64,000 bases of DNA, taken from Ramazzottius varieornatus. Its lineage: Eukaryota > Animalia > Tardigrada. The notes beneath the pieces are model-generated. The model had not been told where the DNA came from, did not search any database, and worked only from the letters and a program-made list of their open reading frames with translations. Of the stretch, positions 26,293 through 33,780 are shown one piece after another (the first letter of the stretch is position 1; each line of letters starts with the position of its first letter). The DNA is taken from positions 627,130 through 691,129 of the forward strand of contig BDGG01000013.1 in NCBI GenBank assembly GCA_001949185.1, written 5' to 3'. A program made the translations under genes and the position numbers.

Positions 26293-27469
26293 ATGTCCGC
26301 TTCGCGCATGTCAAATCAGTAAATACTGCCCTCACCGCCGAACTCTCTCCATCCCAATCTCGTTTTCAAGAAAAATCATCCAGTGACTGCGGATGAACTA
26401 ATCGATCTGTATAACAGCTCGGGCCTGAACAGACCGACCAAGGACGAATTGAGAATGCAAGAGATGCTGGACAACAGCAACTTATTGGTCAGTGCTTGGG
26501 ATGACGGAAGGTTGGTGGGTGTGGCTCGTTCCTTGACAGACTGGGCCTTGTGCTGTTACGTTTCCGATCTGGATATACGGAAGGTAGACCTGAGGATGAT
26601 GTGGTTTCACCACACCACACCGAAAAAAACCACTCTTTTTTGTTTCGGTGTGCTTGAAACACCAAATCGAAAAATTGGTGTCCGAGTCACACCGAATTTG
26701 CCGTTTCGGTGTCTAGGAACACCACATCACACCAAACCGAAAACCTTTTGGTGCACCAGATTTAATGAGCTAGTCAGCTAGCTTGGGCTAGATGAGTATC
26801 GCATACTCGCTGTTTCGCCCCGTGGTTAATTCGACTAAATTTTGATTGTTTAAGCTGCGAAAATTTTCTTGTCAAAAATGGTGATTGACTTTATGGCTTT
26901 TTGCGCTTCTTCGGTCCCCTCTGAGCGATGGTTTTCGCGTGCTGGTAAGGTCGTTACCAAGCCTAGAAGTTCACTAGATAGTACGACCGTGCAAGCTTCG
27001 ATGTGTTTGAAATCTTGGTATTTTTTTGAGTTTCCTACAGCGCAGTTCGATTTGTCGATGACGGATCAATAAATTGGGAATTCGCTCTTTGAAACTTTTT
27101 TCGGTTTTTCGATTTGGTTTGGTGTGGTGCACCGAAAGAGTGGTGTCCGATCCACACCACACCGGAAAAAGTGGTGTGGCTTTCGCACCGAAAAACCAGT
27201 TTCGGTGTGGAGAAGCACCGAACCGAAAAACACCACACCACACATAACCACACTTTTCTCAGGTCTAACGGAAGGAGTACCAGAAAGGGGGTAGTGGAAA
27301 TCAGCTGATCATGCTCTCGAAGGAAGTAATCGGTCCACTCCCGGGCATCTTCCTGATGGCCGCACCCACCGCTATGGAGTATTACCCGAAACTCGGCAAG
27401 AAAAAGATAGAAAAGGGCTTTATCATACCGGGAACGGGTGGTTGCTTTGTGCGACATTCGGAAATCTAG
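26293..27469 (+). pseudogene. GNAT acetyltransferase pseudogene (paralog of 40795-41265), interrupted by a hAT element
   Basis: Near-identical to the 41265 gene. TAA at 26320 replaces a Glu codon. Removing 26585-27275 restores the frame DLDIRKEYQKGG...AAPTAMEYYPKLG to TAG at 27467-27469. Confidence 0.92.
26585..27267 (+). mobile_element. Non-autonomous hAT element (683 bp) retaining a transposase dimerization-domain remnant
   Basis: TIR TAGACCTGAG / CTCAGGTCTA. 8-bp TSD ACGGAAGG at 26577-26584 and 27268-27275. Many subterminal CACCA/CACCG repeats. 26869-27072 encodes ASSVPSERWFSRAGKVVTKPRSSLDSTTVQASMCLKSW (hATC motif). Confidence 0.95.
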
Positions 27470-27884
27470 ATGACCAATGGTGTTCATCTAAGAATTATTG
27501 GTGATTAAAAGCCAAGCAGTTCAAACTGGTAAAACAGCTGATGCTGTTGTCGAGAAAAAAACTCTACTCTTCAAGGTCAAATAAAATGAAAATCAAGCGC
27601 TCGGTTCTTGCTATCGGCTCCTCGCACTGCAAGCACTGCGGCGCTGTAACTTGAAACGACAAAAGTATAAGTTTTGTGTTTCTGATAGTTGAACAAACAC
27701 TTCAACGACTATTTTGGCCTAGCGATGACTACGCTACGCGCACGAAGCGGAAGTTTGGAACCGGCGGAATAGACGGCAAATTTAGAGTTTATATGTCAGC
27801 TAGAGATAGGAATTCAACTGTGTGACATAATCTCCTTGTGAGTCAGTCTGTGACGACATAGCTCGATACATGGGCTGAAGCGTA

Positions 27885-27979
27885 CGGTATTACCTCTAAG
27901 GTNNNNNNNNNNNNNNNNNNNNNNNNNNNNNNNNNNNNNNNNNNNNNNNNNNTTGCGCGAAACCTTAGAGGTAATACAG
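27885..27979. mobile_element. pogo/Tc2-like element whose interior is lost in an assembly gap
   Basis: TA|CGGTATTACCTCTAAGGT - 50 N - TTGCGCGAAACCTTAGAGGTAATACAG|TA. The TIR resembles the inner TIR at 57000. Confidence 0.8.
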
Positions 27980-28775
27980 TACATCATGTACGACTGTACC
28001 GCAGCGAAACAAAACGTACAGTTTGCAAGCCGTGGTGGTAAAAATCAGCTGATCGGTAACAATCAGCGAAAAAAGTCTTTGCGCATGGTGCCAGTTCATA
28101 ACCCAATGGCCCATCATTTGATGAGTTTCTTTTGAGACCAAAACAATGTTATGCCCTCAATGGTCCCGCCTACGGTCGGTCTTGCCAACTGTTATGTTCC
28201 GGTTCTTATCCCAAACCAATCACGCAACTCGCCCGATCAAGGAACTGAAGGAACTATCAGATCTTTCGACTCCAGAGGGAAAGCCATTTCTCTGCAACAA
28301 TTTGTGCGGCGAAAAAGAGTCTGAGAGAAATCTATTCGCTGTATGAGGAGCAGGACCGAAAAACGCCATTCCTGAAGTTCGTGAAATGGAGCTTAGTTTT
28401 TGTGTATTCGATTCATCTGTATGCTTGGAAATTTCCCTAAAAAACGTGTCACGGTTCGAGCCGCTCGTTCCAACACGCACCATGTACGTATAGCAGTATA
28501 TAGCCAGTAATGCTATCTGCCGCATGCAGCAAGAAGCACCTGCCCGTGCCGCCGTGGGCGAAACGGTTTGTTCCAAACTTTACCTTCGTGCGTGTATTCA
28601 GATTAAGATCTTCCATATGTATGATTGCGCTGACTTTTCCGCGCCAAAGGCTTAATAAGTTGGCTCAGACACACGGCACGGTTTGCCGTAAATAATCGAC
28701 GTTTGCTGTTCTGTTTCTGAGTATTCCAGATATTGTGCCCAAATCTTTCCTTCAAACCTAGCCATACTGCGGCTG

Positions 28776-28782
28776 TATAAAA
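28776..28782 (+). promoter_or_regulatory. TATA box of the 28870 gene
   Basis: TATAAAA about 90 bp upstream of the ATG. Confidence 0.5.
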
Positions 28783-28869
28783 GCCAGTTTAATACCTAAG
28801 CACCCGCACGTAAGAAAACCTTATCCTGGATCATTTACACTGGTACTACTGAATTACAATTATTTCATC

Positions 28870-29175
28870 ATGCCTACGGACCACTCGAAGGACAAGGAGA
28901 CCAAGCATGAGAGTGTGGAAACGATCCACAGTGGATTCGGGAAAATCACAAGTCATACTTTTACTGAGGATCAAGGAGGCGAGGATCCCGGCATGAATTA
29001 CAGGGATAAGCGATCGACCAAGGTCCTTCCCGACGGTCGAGACAGGGTCCGCGGGCCAGTTCAGGGTTCGAACTCTTCAGGAGACGCAGACGAGACAATC
29101 GAAAATATGTCCACAACAACCGAAGTTACCAACACCGAGAGCAGCAACGTGAAGACGCAAAAGACTCAGCGTTGA
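28870..29175 (+). CDS. Small hydrophilic IDP (101 aa) with a CAHS-N-terminal-like EDQGGEDPGMNYRDKR module
   Basis: Clean ORF with no Cys/Trp, upstream TATA, and clear paralogy to 31487-31780. Confidence 0.8.
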   Translation: MPTDHSKDKETKHESVETIHSGFGKITSHTFTEDQGGEDPGMNYRDKRSTKVLPDGRDRVRGPVQGSNSSGDADETIENMSTTTEVTNTESSNVKTQKTQR

Positions 29176-29394
29176 AGTTTTTACTCTCTCGTGTCTCGTC
29201 CTTCGTGACAGTAAAGGCTTGCGCCCTTGTTATTCCACTGTTTTCACTTTCAAACTCAATACCCTGACTCTGTCAATTTTGAATTTGCATACAGCCGGTT
29301 AGGCTTATGCGATATTGTCTGTGGCTTGTTGAAAGGAGATAAAATCGTAGCTTCGAAAGCAAGAAAAATCGTCGTACTGCGAAGTCTAACTTCT

Positions 29395-29430
29395 GTTGTG
29401 TTGTGTTGTGTTGTGTTGTGTGGTGTTGTT
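29395..29430. repeat. (GTTGT)n microsatellite
   Basis: Direct observation. Confidence 0.85.
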
Positions 29431-31486
29431 GTGATATGCCAGTGACACTGGTTATGCTGTTCGTAGAAAGCGTAGGCCTTGTAATTAACAAAGCCCGGTA
29501 CGGCGCAGACCTTCAAGTCGAGGCACCATGTTGTCGGCTGGATCATGGATGCCCCCTGCCATACGAGGTTCGTGCCATGATAGGGGTGGGTACACAAATG
29601 TTGCTGACCTTAATTTTTGGCACTGACCTCGGTGGTATACCGTTGACGGCGGTGTACCCTACGACTTGACAAAATATAGCGCAAGTTTAAACTTTTAATC
29701 CAGAAACTAAATCAAGAGTGAGTTCATCACTTATGCAGATGTAACGCGTCAGTCCATACATGATTCTAAAGAAGCTGAGATCGTAACGGAATTGATTTCT
29801 GAAATACCTGTCATTCTGTGTACATGTGAGTATCAAGGCGAATGTTCTATGAATTCCACACAGACAGTACGCTCACCGCGGCGTCTGTGTAATGTCAGGT
29901 AGACTTGCGATACAGATCACAACTTGAACCAAGTGGCTAAAGAACGAGGGATATTCAGGGATGCTAAAGTAAAATTTGAATATGCGTTATGACATTATTT
30001 GATATGTGAGCACGTGTCCGACCGAGATGCAAGCCATGGGATTCGATAGCATGATATGTGATAGAAAATGTTGGATGTAGGAAACTATCTTCCTCTACGG
30101 ATTACATCTAAATGCGTGTTAGCACGAAGGCAGGTCATCCTAGGCTTCGTGTTCTGTATATTTCAACGTCAAGGTGCCATAGTACGGACAAGTTAGATGA
30201 ATACCGCAAAGCAGAAAAAATGAATAAAAACTGTGAAATGAGGGAGACCAAAACGCCCAAACTATCTCCCGTTGAAAACAACTGGCTATACATCTGGCTT
30301 TGGCGTTCCCGTTGACATATGTTGCTTCAACGACTAACGAAATGGAAAACTTGCAAATAAGCTTGGATTATAAAGGACACTGAGATTACGCCGAGGGTTG
30401 TTGCTCCAGTGGGAAGTTGAATTCCAAATCTTCCATGGTCAGCTCTGCTGGAAGATCGGGATCGTCTTGAATATCCGGCATTGGAACATCAGGGTTCGGC
30501 GTGGATGGAGCTTCCGGCGGAATTCTGCGCTTCATCCTTTTTCAGAGAAATCTGAAGACGACTTCTTGATGGTCGACGATGAAGTCCTTGTGAACCATAA
30601 TCAGCGTAAGGAATGTCAGTTTATCGTTCTTCATTCTTGTTCGAAGATAAATTTGATTACGACGTGATGTTCATGGTAAAAGATGTATATCAACGCTAAA
30701 AGATTGCACGTGTCGATATGTCATGCTCCTTGGTTCAGTGGTCAATTTGCGTCTGACCAGCAGTGCAACTGACTCAAAATACAATTATTGATATCACACC
30801 ATAATTGCACAGCCATGCTGTGGTCCGTTTCCGGTTGGACCCTAAAACAAAGGGTCCGATACCCAAGTAAATGCTCCCTACTGACGGATCATGGCACACA
30901 CGTTTTGAATGGCGGCATCCATGGGCTGGATTAAGATCAGTGTTACTTAAATCATTAAAATAAGAAACCATTTTTAATAATCAAAATCGTTTTAGTTGTG
31001 CGGGTTGGTGCTCGCTTGATTGATTGATCCCTTATGAAAAAATCAAATTTCAATAATTGAAATTTCGCAGCGATAATTGATTTTACTTGCAGTCAGCTGA
31101 TCACATAGACTTAACATTAGGACGTGACTTTTAATAATTTCAATTGCATAGTATTGATAAAATAACACTGATTAAGATTGCAGCTGAGCGCATATGAGTA
31201 ACCGAGCCATTCGTGATGGCTTGACTGTTGTGCTACCGATTAGGAAACTGCCGCCCGCCATTTCCCATGTCCTGGAGGCTTTGACACTTGTGCGTTCGAT
31301 CCGTCTTTCCGTAAACAACAGCGCCGTTTCTTTGTTCTGATCGAAGTTTTCGATTTTTAAAGGTACTGTATGCGAATATTTTACGGCCGGTTGTTTTCAA
31401 AAAGTCAGGTAAGACTGCGCCTTGCAGCGACTTTGTACATTTCTTTTTGTAATCCACTTTTCCTGACCCCGTTTCAGCAGCACATA

Positions 31487-31780
31487 ATGTCGGGAAAGGA
31501 GGTAAAGTATGAGCGGGTGGAGAAGGCGCATGTCGACGGAGACGGAAACGTCGTTTCTGTAGATGTCCGCGAAGACCAAGGTGGCGAGGACCCCGGCATG
31601 AATTTCAAAGACAAGCGTCAAGCCGATTTGGTTCCGGATGAAAGAGTCCTTGGGATGACTCAAGGGACGACTACAGGGGGCGTAGGCAGCGATCTGACCA
31701 CTGGTGTGACCACCACACGCACAACTACTGTGACAAATGCGGAATCCGTGGACCCCACTTTGACAAGACATATCCACTGA
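31487..31780 (+). CDS. Small hydrophilic IDP (97 aa) with a CAHS-N-terminal-like KYERVEK...EDQGGEDPGMNFKDKR module
   Basis: True start is ATG 31487, after a probable 5'-UTR intron (GTAAGA at 31409 to CAG at 31477). AATAAA at 31914. Paralog of 28870. Confidence 0.85.
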   Translation: MSGKEVKYERVEKAHVDGDGNVVSVDVREDQGGEDPGMNFKDKRQADLVPDERVLGMTQGTTTGGVGSDLTTGVTTTRTTTVTNAESVDPTLTRHIH

Positions 31781-32494
31781 GTATGCTACCAAGTCTGATC
31801 TTAGCATAGTTATCTGGTGAGCCATTTTGCTCCGCGAATTTGAACTTTGATAATAATTTTACGATGAGTTGTCATAATCTGTGAGATCTTCTGCAGCCAC
31901 TTTTGTGACATGTAATAAAACTCGATTTTGTGGTCATAATTATGTTTACTTCGGTGGGAGGGATCAGTCATTGCGAAGGCAGTCGCGGTCTGTGACAGTA
32001 AACAAAAAACAGCCCTGGGCGATCACCAGCACAGCATGCAATCTGCCTGTCTTGCAATGGTCAGGGTACTGCACATATGCGCCAGTGACTTTTAGACAAT
32101 GGTCGAGAAGTCATTCTTACGTAATATGTGCACGCATGGAGTATTTTCTTGAATATTGAGTACCGCACTCAACGTTTACGGTAAATTCCACAAAGAAAAG
32201 TCGTGGGGGCCACAGTTCAGCAGAGGTAATAGTACATTCTTCCGTTAGAAATCGGTTTGCCTTGTTTAAAGCAGTGCACGGAAGAAAGCATGACTGATGT
32301 AGAAATTAATCGTTTTATTGACCACGAATATTGTTTACCGGCGTTCGTGATATTAACCGTCTCACATTTTCCTTGCGGCGCTAAAACTGAAGTTATTCAT
32401 GATATGACATTTCAGAGTGCACAAAAGACTGGACGAAAACATTTTCTTTTTAGAAATGGTGAAAAATTGTATGATGGTGTGGTTATGAGCAAAT

Positions 32495-33780
32495 CTATCG
32501 GCGTTCAGTGTGTTGTTCGGTATGTTTAATCTGAGTGACGGTGGTGGGTCCAGTCTTGGTGGTGCTGCTCTTGTCGGCGGAAGTCTGGATTGCACCCTTG
32601 GAGACGGTGGTACCAATAGCGGACTCGACCTTGACATTGACGTTAGTCTGGGCCTTGGCGCTTTCCAAAGCCTCTTTAGCGGCATTGCGCTCAAGCTCGA
32701 GGGCTCGCATTGCGTACTCAGCCTCCAGCTGGATTTCTCTCTCTTGTCGGTTGACTTGGTTCTCAACCATTTCCTTGCGGAATTCTGAAAACAAAAGACG
32801 TCAGGTTGAAAACAAAGCTACGAGCCAAAGCTGCAGGCCTAAACCTTACCAAGATCACGGATGTGTTGTCGCTCCAAGATCTGTCGGATGAGTTCGGCAT
32901 CACGCTCCACTTCCTCTCGGTACTGGGCAGCGCGCATACCCGCGTCTTGCTCATCTTGCCTGGCCAGTTGCTCGACCTGTAAGAAGGTAATCACTTTGAA
33001 ACTCGTGCTTTCGGTATTGCGATCAAAAAGGGGCGTGATCGGAGCAGTTTAGATTTATTACCTTGGCCTTGTAGCGAGCATACTCTTCAGGTCCCAAATC
33101 CTTGCGCTGGATCTTGCTCAAGTCAACGGTGGTCCCTGCGGTAATTTCAGCGCGAGCTCCACCGCCGAGGTTAAGGTCGAGGTTGCTGTGGATGGGAGCA
33201 GCGATGTTGGGAGCAGCAACGGTCAAGTTCTGTAAATTGCAAAAAAATAAATTGAAAATCGGGAATATCGAAGAACCTTCGCCCTACTGTAACCCGAGCT
33301 GAAAAACTATGCCGGTTGATTCTCTTTTTCCACGAGAGCTCGTGCTTTGTCGTACAAGTTCGTACCTTGTCTTGGGTGACGGTGAAGCCGGTTCGGACAG
33401 ATTCCATGTTGGTGCTGCCGAAAGTTGTCACTGGGACTGCAACCAAGAAAGAACATCAGACCGGTCTCAAACATACTTGGAAAGATTACCTAACGTTAAC
33501 GGGCTAACGTTGCTGTTCACTTACCGGTGACGACGTGGGTCTCGCTTTCGGTTTTGGTACCATGCTTGATGACCTCACGCTCCTCATGGACCTCGGAGTG
33601 AGATCCAGGGGGGACGGGGACAGTTCGCTGGGCTCCACCGATGGTAGGTCCTCCACTGCTGGTGTGGACCTCGGTGCGCGAGTAGCTGGAACTTCCTTGA
33701 ACACCTTGACCACCTTGACCACCTTGCTGGCTGGAGGACGAGTGTTGGCTGGACGATTGCTGGTTCTGTCGGGAAGACAT
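32495..33780 (-). CDS. CAHS3: Cytosolic abundant heat-soluble protein 3 (303 aa)
   Basis: Exons 33780-33525, 33436-33366, 33229-33062, 32976-32850 and 32784-32495 total 912 nt with all GT-AG introns. Protein runs MSSRQNQQSSSQHSSSS...LERQHIRDLEFRKEMVENQVNRQEREIQLEAEYAMRALELER...HTERR and contains the CAHS helical motifs. It matches R. varieornatus CAHS3 as I recall it. Confidence 0.96.

What the first reader, a model, noticed from the sequence alone, without database searches (positions are those of the whole stretch)
28870..33780. Two stand-alone 'CAHS N-module' genes beside CAHS3: a split version of a long CAHS protein?
Seen: two ~100-aa hydrophilic genes (28870-29175 and 31487-31780, + strand) lie immediately downstream of, and convergent with, CAHS3. 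They share KE-K(H/Y)E-VE...EDQGGEDPGMN(Y/F)-DKR---(L/V)PD and a Thr-rich TTT-(E/T)VTN-ES segment, and they lack the CAHS helical motifs. Recalled and needing verification: the long Hypsibius CAHS 89226 begins M-xKESKYERVEKVNVD-DG...EDRGKEDPGMNFQDKR and only later reaches the GAQRTVP...GPEEY region shared with CAHS3, whereas CAHS3 here lacks that N-module. Inference: fission (or fusion elsewhere) leaves this module as independent mini-IDPs in the CAHS3 locus. They could be an unrecognised small-protein arm of the anhydrobiosis system, for example modulating CAHS3 gelation or filaments in trans. Annotation based on the C-terminal motifs would miss them.
Basis: partly seen in the sequence, partly recalled or inferred. 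Interest (0 to 1): 0.88.

Follow-up and report, generated by a model that had tools for sequence, protein, structure and literature searches.

The report
Stand-alone CAHS N-module mini-proteins
Next to the tardigrade desiccation gene CAHS3 lie two real, translated genes for ~100-residue disordered proteins that are free-standing copies of the conserved "head" found at the start of the long CAHS proteins; this small-protein family is annotated only as hypothetical and has not been linked to CAHS in the papers I could search.

Summary
In this Ramazzottius varieornatus window, 28870-29175(+) and 31487-31780(+) encode paralogous hydrophilic proteins of 101 and 97 aa, convergent with CAHS3. Both are already annotated as hypothetical proteins (RvY_16233, RvY_16235). 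Both were detected by mass spectrometry in Tanaka et al. 2022's fraction of proteins that condense reversibly in 20% TFE, together with CAHS3.

Their first ~50 residues are clearly homologous to the N-termini of long CAHS proteins: CAHS11/14/15 in this genome and CAHS 89226 of Hypsibius (E 3e-19). They lack the CAHS helical core. The module is tardigrade-restricted, matches no Pfam family, and is predicted with moderate confidence to form a beta-hairpin followed by an invariant acidic loop. R. varieornatus has seven copies, three on CAHS genes and four stand-alone.

A simple fission of CAHS3 is not supported. The genes are convergent, the two copies are old (dS saturated), and no module relic lies upstream of CAHS3. 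Partial duplication of the first exon of a long CAHS gene fits better.

Action in trans on CAHS remains untested; the complex prediction gave no verdict. Other first-stage notes of this scan flagged the module copies on other contigs of this genome.

The parts
28776..28783 (+). TATA-like box (TATAAAAG), 87 nt upstream of the ORF1 start codon
   Evidence: Read directly from the sequence. Function as a promoter element not tested.
28870..29175 (+). ORF1 = RvY_16233: single-exon CDS, 101 aa. N-module at about aa 8-56, then a Thr/Ser-rich tail. The faster-evolving copy.
   Evidence: An identical protein (P0009) is in NCBI. A module HMM scores 75.6 bits, E 3e-22. Detected by MS with 68% coverage and 3 peptides in the T-DRYP fraction. 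AF2 gives only a weak hairpin.
31370..31408 (+). Annotated 5' exon of RvY_16235, containing an upstream in-frame ATG. Probably 5' leader rather than conserved coding sequence.
   Evidence: The P0001 model (113 aa) compared with the DNA. The orthologue P0002, CAHS11 and CAHS 89226 all start at the Met directly before the module.
31409..31477 (+). 69-nt GT-AG intron with a tandem CAG-CAG acceptor. The annotated isoforms are 113 aa, 112 aa and an intron-retaining 136 aa.
   Evidence: P0001, P0026, P0027.
31487..31780 (+). ORF2 = RvY_16235 conserved CDS, 97 aa. N-module at aa 3-51 (predicted beta-hairpin 8-16/22-31 plus an acidic loop), then a Thr-rich tail.
   Evidence: The module HMM scores 95.1 bits, E 2.5e-28. 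AF2 pLDDT is 76-81 over residues 11-30. One MS peptide in T-DRYPs. A full-length 96-aa orthologue, P0002, is 57% identical.
31914..31919 (+). AATAAA, 134 nt downstream of the ORF2 stop codon; candidate poly(A) signal
   Evidence: Not verified with reads.
32495..33780 (-). CAHS3 (RvY_16236), five exons (about 33780-33526, 33452-33366, 33277-33038, 32979-32851, 32785-32495). Lacks the N-module. Convergent neighbour of ORF2.
   Evidence: tblastn of database protein P0031 on the window. No module by HMM.

Best explanation
Shown: the two ORFs are paralogous, expressed, protein-coding genes (RvY_16233, RvY_16235). Each encodes a ~100-aa acidic, hydrophilic, mostly disordered protein. Each protein consists of one copy of a ~50-aa tardigrade-restricted module followed by a poorly conserved Thr-rich tail. 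The same module heads the long CAHS proteins of the CAHS3/11/14/15 clade (Fleming et al.'s 'CAHS6', which also holds Hypsibius CAHS 89226). It also occurs in a second family of small stand-alone proteins, such as RvY_12774 next to CAHS11. The mini-proteins lack the CAHS helical core, so they are not CAHS proteins in the defining sense.

Inferred origin: a partial duplication of the 5' part of the intron-less first exon of a long CAHS gene of the CAHS14/15 type, not a split of CAHS3. CAHS3 lost its head separately.

Inferred mechanism: the module is a charged beta-hairpin followed by an invariant ED-x-GGEDPGMN(F/Y)-x-DKR-P loop. This gives the long CAHS proteins an extra terminal interaction element. 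The mini-proteins carry one such element and no filament-forming helices. On water loss they condense reversibly along with the CAHS proteins; the published fractionation shows the co-fractionation, not binding. There they most likely act as monovalent heads. They would either occupy the sites used by the heads of CAHS11/14/15, tuning network cross-linking, or bind the same unknown client.
For: Identity and reality:
- Exact ORFs; paralogy at E 9e-17; tails alike beyond composition.
- GenBank entries RvY_16235-1/-2/-3 and the 101-aa protein.
- MS detection of RvY_16233.1 (68% coverage), RvY_16235.3 and RvY_12774.1 among 336 T-DRYPs, all 'tardigrade-unique'. Their assigned H. exemplaris and P. 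metropolitanus orthologues rise by log2FC 3.3-6.1 on desiccation (PMC9592077 S1 Data).

Homology to CAHS heads:
- Own-genome hits to CAHS15 (E 1.4e-16), CAHS14 and CAHS11, where the module lies in one open frame with CAHS exon 1.
- CAHS 89226 at E 3e-19.
- 18 of 21 clade members carry the module; CAHS3 does not.

Restriction to tardigrades: 16 true hits in 1.84 billion representatives, and every named one is a tardigrade protein. No Pfam family and no PDB relative.

Selection: the module has dN/dS of about 0.2 while dS is saturated. A 96-aa orthologue in another organism has the same start and a similar C-terminal end.

Origin:
- Module trees put these genes with the CAHS-borne modules rather than with the RvY_12774 family (90/93 and 80/97).
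- Like CAHS14/15, they have no intron inside the module, unlike CAHS11 and RvY_12774.
- The ORF2 and P0002 tails align in the same order with the CAHS segment just before the G-A-Q-R-T-V-P motif (10/500 and 3/500 shuffles).

Structure: AF2 predicts a hairpin at residues 8-16/22-31, pLDDT 76-81, with the rest disordered.

Mechanistic analogy: beta-beta contacts between terminal regions build CAHS D gels (PMC10949331).
Against: - No direct evidence that the mini-proteins bind any CAHS protein. Co-fractionation after TFE treatment is not binding, and the CAHS3+ORF2 complex prediction gave no verdict.
- The hairpin is only moderately confident for ORF2 and weak for ORF1.
- The trees rest on 49-57 columns. 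They cannot root the family or date the mini-genes. A clade joining both small-protein families is only borderline disfavoured (AU p 0.068), and a Paramacrobiotus member may make the lineage older than the Ramazzottius CAHS duplications.
- The tail-to-CAHS similarity is modest. It is not seen for ORF1 and was not recovered by an HMM of that motif.
- The expression data come from best-hit 'orthologues' in other species, which are probably members of the other small family.
- I could not examine R. varieornatus reads.
Confidence: 0.6

Rival explanations
1. Gene fission. An ancestral long CAHS3 was split, leaving its head as an independent gene beside the now head-less CAHS3; the head gene was later duplicated.
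For: Of the four clade members in this genome, CAHS3 is the only one without the module, and the only one with stand-alone copies of the CAHS-like module type next to it. The mini-gene modules group with CAHS-borne modules. ORF1, ORF2 and CAHS15 share the E-D-Q-G-G variant of the loop.
Against: The mini-genes are on the opposite strand and downstream of CAHS3, so at least an inversion is needed. Both CAHS3 and the ORF2 tail appear to keep the segment that precedes the Q-R-T-V motif, so the parts overlap rather than complement each other. dS between the copies is saturated. No relics were found. A 300-aa head-less CAHS3-like protein from another source (P0030) shows that the loss is not recent.
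Confidence: 0.15
2. Independent small protectant proteins. The mini-proteins act alone, for example as molecular shields or as condensate or vitrification components, and have no specific relation to CAHS networks. The shared module only reflects common descent.
For: They are hydrophilic, disordered and desiccation-associated. They are recovered in the reversibly condensing fraction, which also holds LEA proteins and many unrelated proteins. No predicted contact with CAHS3 (one search gave no verdict, so this is not evidence either way).
Against: The module is far more conserved than the tails (invariant E, V, D, G, D and N positions; dN/dS about 0.2 against about 0.9). That argues for a specific interaction surface rather than a bulk physicochemical role. 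The same module is kept at the N-terminus of filament-forming CAHS proteins across at least three genera.
Confidence: 0.2
3. Expressed but functionless remnants of truncated CAHS duplicates.
For: The tails evolve almost neutrally. ORF1 is a long branch with a degraded hairpin prediction.
Against: The ORFs stay open although dS is saturated. The module is under purifying selection. There is a full-length 96-aa orthologue with matching start and end. The protein is detected, with 68% coverage for ORF1.
Confidence: 0.04
4. The ORFs are exons of a larger gene.
For: ORF2 has an upstream exon and intron.
Against: All three annotated isoforms differ only at the 5' end and stop at 31780. ORF1 is annotated, and detected, as a 101-aa protein. 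The orthologue P0002 is 96 aa. No CAHS-like exons lie downstream.
Confidence: 0.01

Closest known systems
Long CAHS proteins of the CAHS3 clade (R. varieornatus CAHS11, CAHS14, CAHS15; H. exemplaris CAHS 89226 = HdCAHS14; P. metropolitanus PrCAHS14)
   Same: They share the ~50-aa N-terminal module, 44-71% identical and at the same position directly after the start Met in several members. ORF2 and P0002 also share a weak collinear match to the Thr-rich segment before the Q-R-T-V motif. Both groups are tardigrade-restricted, disordered, desiccation-induced and recovered in T-DRYPs.
   Different: The mini-proteins stop after about 100 aa. They have none of the CAHS helical motifs (CR1, CR2, H1) that define the family and drive filament formation (PMC9592077).
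RvY_12774 family of small module proteins (134-287 aa: H. exemplaris BV898_09039 and BV898_09042; P. metropolitanus XP_055337188, auto-named 'CAHS 89226-like')
   Same: Stand-alone N-module proteins encoded next to a CAHS gene of the same clade. Detected in T-DRYPs and strongly induced on drying.
   Different: They form a separate module clade. They have a different, conserved tail (P-I-G-V-V-P-S, then I-P-G-P-F), introns flanking the module, and a tandem position upstream of the CAHS gene rather than a convergent one.
CAHS D (H. exemplaris) terminal regions
   Same: A functional analogy only. These are short terminal regions with transient beta-structure that mediate inter-molecular contacts needed for gel networks (PMC10949331).
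   Different: No sequence relation was tested or claimed. CAHS D belongs to another CAHS clade and lacks this module.

Membership tests
CAHS protein family | Conserved C-terminal helical motifs CR1 and CR2, present in 40 of 40 and 39 of 40 CAHS proteins (Tanaka et al. 2022) | tested here: not met
   ORF2 against CAHS3: no HSP better than E 0.4. ORF1 and ORF2 against full-length CAHS 89226: only the N-module aligns significantly. AF2 predicts no helices.
CAHS protein family | Restricted to (eu)tardigrades | tested here: met
   16 true hits among 1.84 billion representatives. Every hit that carries an organism name is from R. varieornatus, H. exemplaris or P. metropolitanus.
CAHS protein family | Heat solubility and high abundance in the cytoplasm | not testable with these tools
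   There is only indirect evidence: recovery in the 20% TFE reversibly condensing fraction, with low spectral counts.
CAHS N-module family (unnamed; defined here) | A ~50-aa module: K-E-x-K-Y-E-R-V-E, a turn, a second strand, then E-D-x-G-G-E-D-P-G-M-N-(F/Y)-x-D-K-R-P. Invariant positions in ORF2 numbering are E5, E9, V11, D30, G32, D35 and N39. | tested here: met
   The module HMM scores 95.1 bits (ORF2) and 75.6 bits (ORF1) against the six-frame translation of the window. Alignments A1 and A3. ORF1 has substitutions at some near-invariant positions.
CAHS N-module family (unnamed; defined here) | Module placed at or near the N-terminus | tested here: met
   It starts at residue 3 in ORF2 and residue 8 in ORF1, as in CAHS11 and CAHS 89226.
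T-DRYPs (operational class, Tanaka et al. 2022) | Precipitates in 20% TFE and re-dissolves; identified by nanoLC-MS/MS | not testable with these tools
   Taken from the paper's S1 Data, which lists RvY_16233.1 and RvY_16235.3. The raw data (PXD030241) were not re-analysed.

The most novel reading that the evidence does not exclude
The N-module is a dedicated docking head of the anhydrobiotic CAHS network. The stand-alone mini-proteins (RvY_16233, RvY_16235, RvY_12774 and RvY_12760, with their relatives in other eutardigrades) are monovalent regulators. By capping or competing with the heads of long CAHS proteins, or by supplying a head in trans to the head-less CAHS3, they would set when and how densely CAHS filaments cross-link into a gel during drying and rehydration. 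That would be a small-protein control layer for tardigrade gelation that has not been recognised.
Probability: 0.2. Interest if true: 0.8.

Novelty: new variant of a known kind. Interest (0 to 1): 0.55.

Why it matters
Work on CAHS proteins has concentrated on the helical C-terminal core and on short family members such as CAHS D, CAHS1, CAHS3, CAHS8 and CAHS12. Tanaka et al. defined ten sequence motifs. Every one of them occurs in CAHS3 or CAHS12, and both proteins lack the N-module, so the module is not among those motifs.

The module is nevertheless the best-conserved non-helical element of one CAHS clade. It also exists as at least four separate small genes in R. varieornatus. Three of the four products are detected as proteins in the dehydration-mimic condensing fraction, and their assigned relatives in other species are induced 10- to 70-fold on drying.

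Recognising these genes as one family gives unnamed 'tardigrade-unique' desiccation proteins a structural handle. It also provides a natural experiment: the same head occurs fused in CAHS11/14/15, absent in CAHS3, and free in the mini-proteins. That makes the function of the CAHS N-terminal extension directly testable with existing cell, gelation and DIPA-CRISPR assays.

Tried and rejected
As a result there are no transcript ends, and the source and gene neighbourhood of the orthologue P0002 are unknown.

2. Complex prediction with CAHS3 (P0031) and ORF2 returned 'no answer' (score 0.00). This is not evidence for or against binding.

3. I tested whether the tails match the CAHS motif around Y-Q-R-T-E-V through Q-R-T-V. 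An HMM built from ten CAHS proteins scored no mini-protein tail above shuffled controls. A second, composition-controlled local-alignment test was positive for ORF2 and P0002 but not for ORF1. I therefore treat this similarity as suggestive only.

4. A search for decayed CAHS exons downstream of the mini-genes, or a decayed module upstream of CAHS3, found none.

5. A blastn comparison found DNA similarity only inside the module-coding stretch, both between the two mini-gene regions and between the ORF2 region and the CAHS14/15 and C8 loci; the ORF1 region matched none of those loci. The size of the duplicated unit cannot be recovered.

6. Pfam, PDB sequences, the ESM Atlas and a JGI metagenome scan all gave nothing usable.

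7. Two distant hits in the representative search, P0018 and P0019, are repeat proteins that match only a short piece of the query. I set them aside as spurious.

8. dN/dS between ORF2 and CAHS15 could not be computed because dS is saturated.

9. I built no exon-joined protein model. CAHS11 and CAHS14 exons were handled as separate pieces. The full-length CAHS sequences I used are the database entries returned.


Full report
**What is in the sequence**

The window is from Ramazzottius varieornatus. It is G000 contig C13, 627130-691129, and the ORF2 product is GenBank 'hypothetical protein RvY_16235-2'.

- ORF1 (28870-29175, +) encodes 101 aa. ORF2 (31487-31780, +) encodes 97 aa.
- They share 54% identity over 50 aa, E 9e-17.
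- Their Thr-rich tails are more similar than composition allows: 0 of 2000 shuffles reach the observed score.
- Both proteins are acidic and very hydrophilic, with no Cys or Trp.
- CAHS3 (database protein P0031) maps to five minus-strand exons from 33780 to 32495. ORF2 and CAHS3 are therefore convergent, with stop codons about 715 nt apart.
- ORF1 has a TATAAAAG box 87 nt upstream of its ATG. ORF2 has an AATAAA 134 nt past its stop codon.
- RvY_16235 has a short 5' exon (31370-31408) and a 69-nt intron (31409-31477) with a CAG-CAG tandem acceptor. These explain the three annotated isoforms of 136, 113 and 112 aa.
- The conserved start is the Met at 31487. The 96-aa orthologue P0002, CAHS11 and CAHS 89226 all begin at that point.

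**They are real proteins**

Published proteomics fills part of the gap. The source is S1 Data of Tanaka et al. 2022 (PMC9592077), which lists 336 proteins that precipitate in 20% trifluoroethanol and then re-dissolve ('T-DRYPs'). It includes:

| Protein | Length | Coverage / peptides | Note |
|---|---|---|---|
| RvY_16233.1 | 101 aa, 11.1 kDa | 68% / 3 | ORF1; IUPred 0.86 |
| RvY_16235.3 | 112 aa | 11.6% / 1 | ORF2 |
| RvY_12774.1 | 134 aa | 29% / 3 | stand-alone relative on contig C8 |
| RvY_16236.1 | 303 aa | 77% / 18 unique | CAHS3 |

The three small proteins are classed 'tardigrade-unique' (as is CAHS3). Their assigned H. exemplaris and P. metropolitanus orthologues are up-regulated on desiccation, with log2FC 5.8-6.1 and 3.3-5.2. 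Those orthologue assignments are best hits driven by the module, so the induction applies to the family rather than to strict orthologues. ORF1's identity with RvY_16233 rests on the matching length and mass and on the 101-aa NCBI entry P0009.

**Homology to CAHS N-termini**

A search of the whole genome with ORF2 finds seven module copies:
- the two in this window;
- CAHS15 (RvY_16825; E 1.4e-16, 69% identity) and CAHS14 (RvY_16824), in tandem on C14;
- CAHS11 (RvY_12773) on C8;
- RvY_12774, directly upstream of CAHS11 on the same strand;
- the divergent RvY_12760.

In CAHS14 and CAHS15 the module lies in one uninterrupted open frame with the CAHS exon-1 segment that CAHS3 also has, the stretch around the Q-R-T-V motif. 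That exon-1 segment occurs in only four genes of the genome: CAHS3, 11, 14 and 15. These four are exactly the Ramazzottius members of Fleming et al.'s CAHS6 clade (PMC10799326).

An exhaustive HMMER search of 1.84 billion representatives gave 16 true relatives. Every one that carries an organism name is from a tardigrade.

Hypsibius CAHS 89226 (P0034) begins with the module. ORF2 matches it at E 3e-19 (60% over 50 aa) and ORF1 at E 1e-10.

Of 21 clade proteins retrieved, 18 carry the module. CAHS3, a 300-aa CAHS3-like protein (P0030) and P0039 do not. Neither mini-protein matches the CAHS helical core. Pfam has no model for the module, and no solved structure is related by sequence.

**The module**

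Across 18-27 sequences, the invariant positions in ORF2 numbering are E5, E9, V11, D30, G32, D35 and N39, with about ten more nearly invariant.

AlphaFold2 with the family alignment predicts a beta-hairpin at residues 8-16 and 22-31 of ORF2, with pLDDT about 76-81. The rest is disordered (mean pLDDT 59). For the more divergent ORF1 the hairpin is short and low in confidence.

Between ORF1 and ORF2, dS is saturated (1.4-2.0). dN/dS is about 0.2 in the module and about 0.9 in the tail. These values are rough, but they indicate an old duplication with selection concentrated on the module.

**Origin**

Trees of the module (49-57 columns) are poorly resolved but consistent.
- ORF1, ORF2, P0002 and a 116-aa P. 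metropolitanus protein (P0008) fall on one side of a branch, with support 84/85 and 75/87.
- That group sits with the CAHS-borne modules and apart from the RvY_12774 family (90/93 and 80/97).
- A position as sister to the CAHS15 lineage is not rejected (AU p 0.57).
- One clade holding both small-protein families is borderline (AU p 0.068).

Gene structure agrees. The mini-genes and CAHS14/15 have no intron in the module, whereas CAHS11 and RvY_12774 do.

The tails of ORF2 and P0002 align, in the same order, with the CAHS segment just before the G-A-Q-R-T-V-P motif (10/500 and 3/500 shuffles). ORF1's tail does not, and an HMM of that region found nothing.

Together these results favour a partial duplication of the 5' part of a long CAHS first exon.

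A simple fission of CAHS3 fits poorly:
- The mini-genes lie on the other strand, downstream of CAHS3.
- There are two ancient copies.
- No module relic lies upstream of CAHS3, and no core relic lies downstream of the mini-genes.
- DNA similarity is confined to the module-coding stretch.

The direction of change (truncation or fusion) and its date remain open.

**Mechanism**

This is inferred, apart from the co-fractionation. For CAHS D, beta-beta contacts between terminal regions are needed to build the gel network, while the helices bundle (PMC10949331). By analogy, the N-module would be an additional terminal contact element on CAHS11/14/15. A protein with one such element and no helices would behave as a monovalent cap or competitor, or would bind the same client.

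The published TFE fractionation shows that the mini-proteins condense reversibly under the same conditions as CAHS3, 11, 14 and 15. It does not show binding. The only binding test available here, a complex prediction of CAHS3 with ORF2, returned no verdict and counts neither way.

**Novelty**

The genes are annotated as hypothetical and appear in a supplementary proteomics table. NCBI's automatic naming already calls one core-less Paramacrobiotus relative 'CAHS 89226-like'.

I found no paper that names these locus tags or describes the module or its free-standing copies. The library searched is limited to open full text.

Tanaka et al.'s ten MEME motifs (CR1, CR2, H1-H4 and 1-4) all occur in CAHS3 or CAHS12, both of which lack the module, so the module is not one of them (this is an inference).

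Other first-stage notes of this scan independently flagged the copies on C8 and C14. I checked those loci myself.

Exons were searched or aligned separately by reference, and the full-length CAHS proteins used were database entries returned.

Noticed in passing
window 31476-31480: A tandem CAG-CAG (NAGNAG-type) splice acceptor in the 5' intron of RvY_16235. It accounts for the annotated 113-aa and 112-aa isoforms. Intron retention stays in frame and gives the 136-aa isoform.
   Followed up: partly
L007:1489-1794 (G000:C8, about 231.7 kb): RvY_12760 is a 101-aa ORF with a strongly diverged copy of the module (E 2e-6 to ORF2) and a Pro-rich tail. It lies about 20 kb from the CAHS11/RvY_12774 pair and is absent from the T-DRYP list.
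   Followed up: partly
L005 (G000:C8:250970-254104): RvY_12774 (a three-exon, 134-aa stand-alone module gene) ends about 1 kb upstream of the CAHS11 start on the same strand. H. exemplaris has the same neighbourhood by locus-tag order (BV898_09038 CAHS 89226, then BV898_09039 and BV898_09042). P0011 and P0038 both sit on an ENA contig of 130,849 nt, possibly the same contig in a third species.
   Followed up: partly
window about 27.85-27.95 kb: A run of N (an assembly gap) shows up as X residues in the ORF at 27814-27987.
   Followed up: no
window 29385-29430: A short (GTTGT)n-like microsatellite lies downstream of ORF1.
   Followed up: no
window 29200-31350: By locus-tag numbering, an annotated gene (RvY_16234) should lie between the two mini-genes. 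I saw no convincing long ORF there and did not identify it.
   Followed up: no
window 26383-26781 (+): A 132-aa ORF whose first half looks, by eye only, like a fragment of a GNAT-type acetyltransferase. It may relate to the GNAT copies that another first-stage note places at about 40.8-42.2 kb of this window.
   Followed up: no
L007:2542-3102 (+): A 186-aa Gly/Tyr-rich repeat ORF (G-G-Y-G-G type) next to RvY_12760.
   Followed up: no
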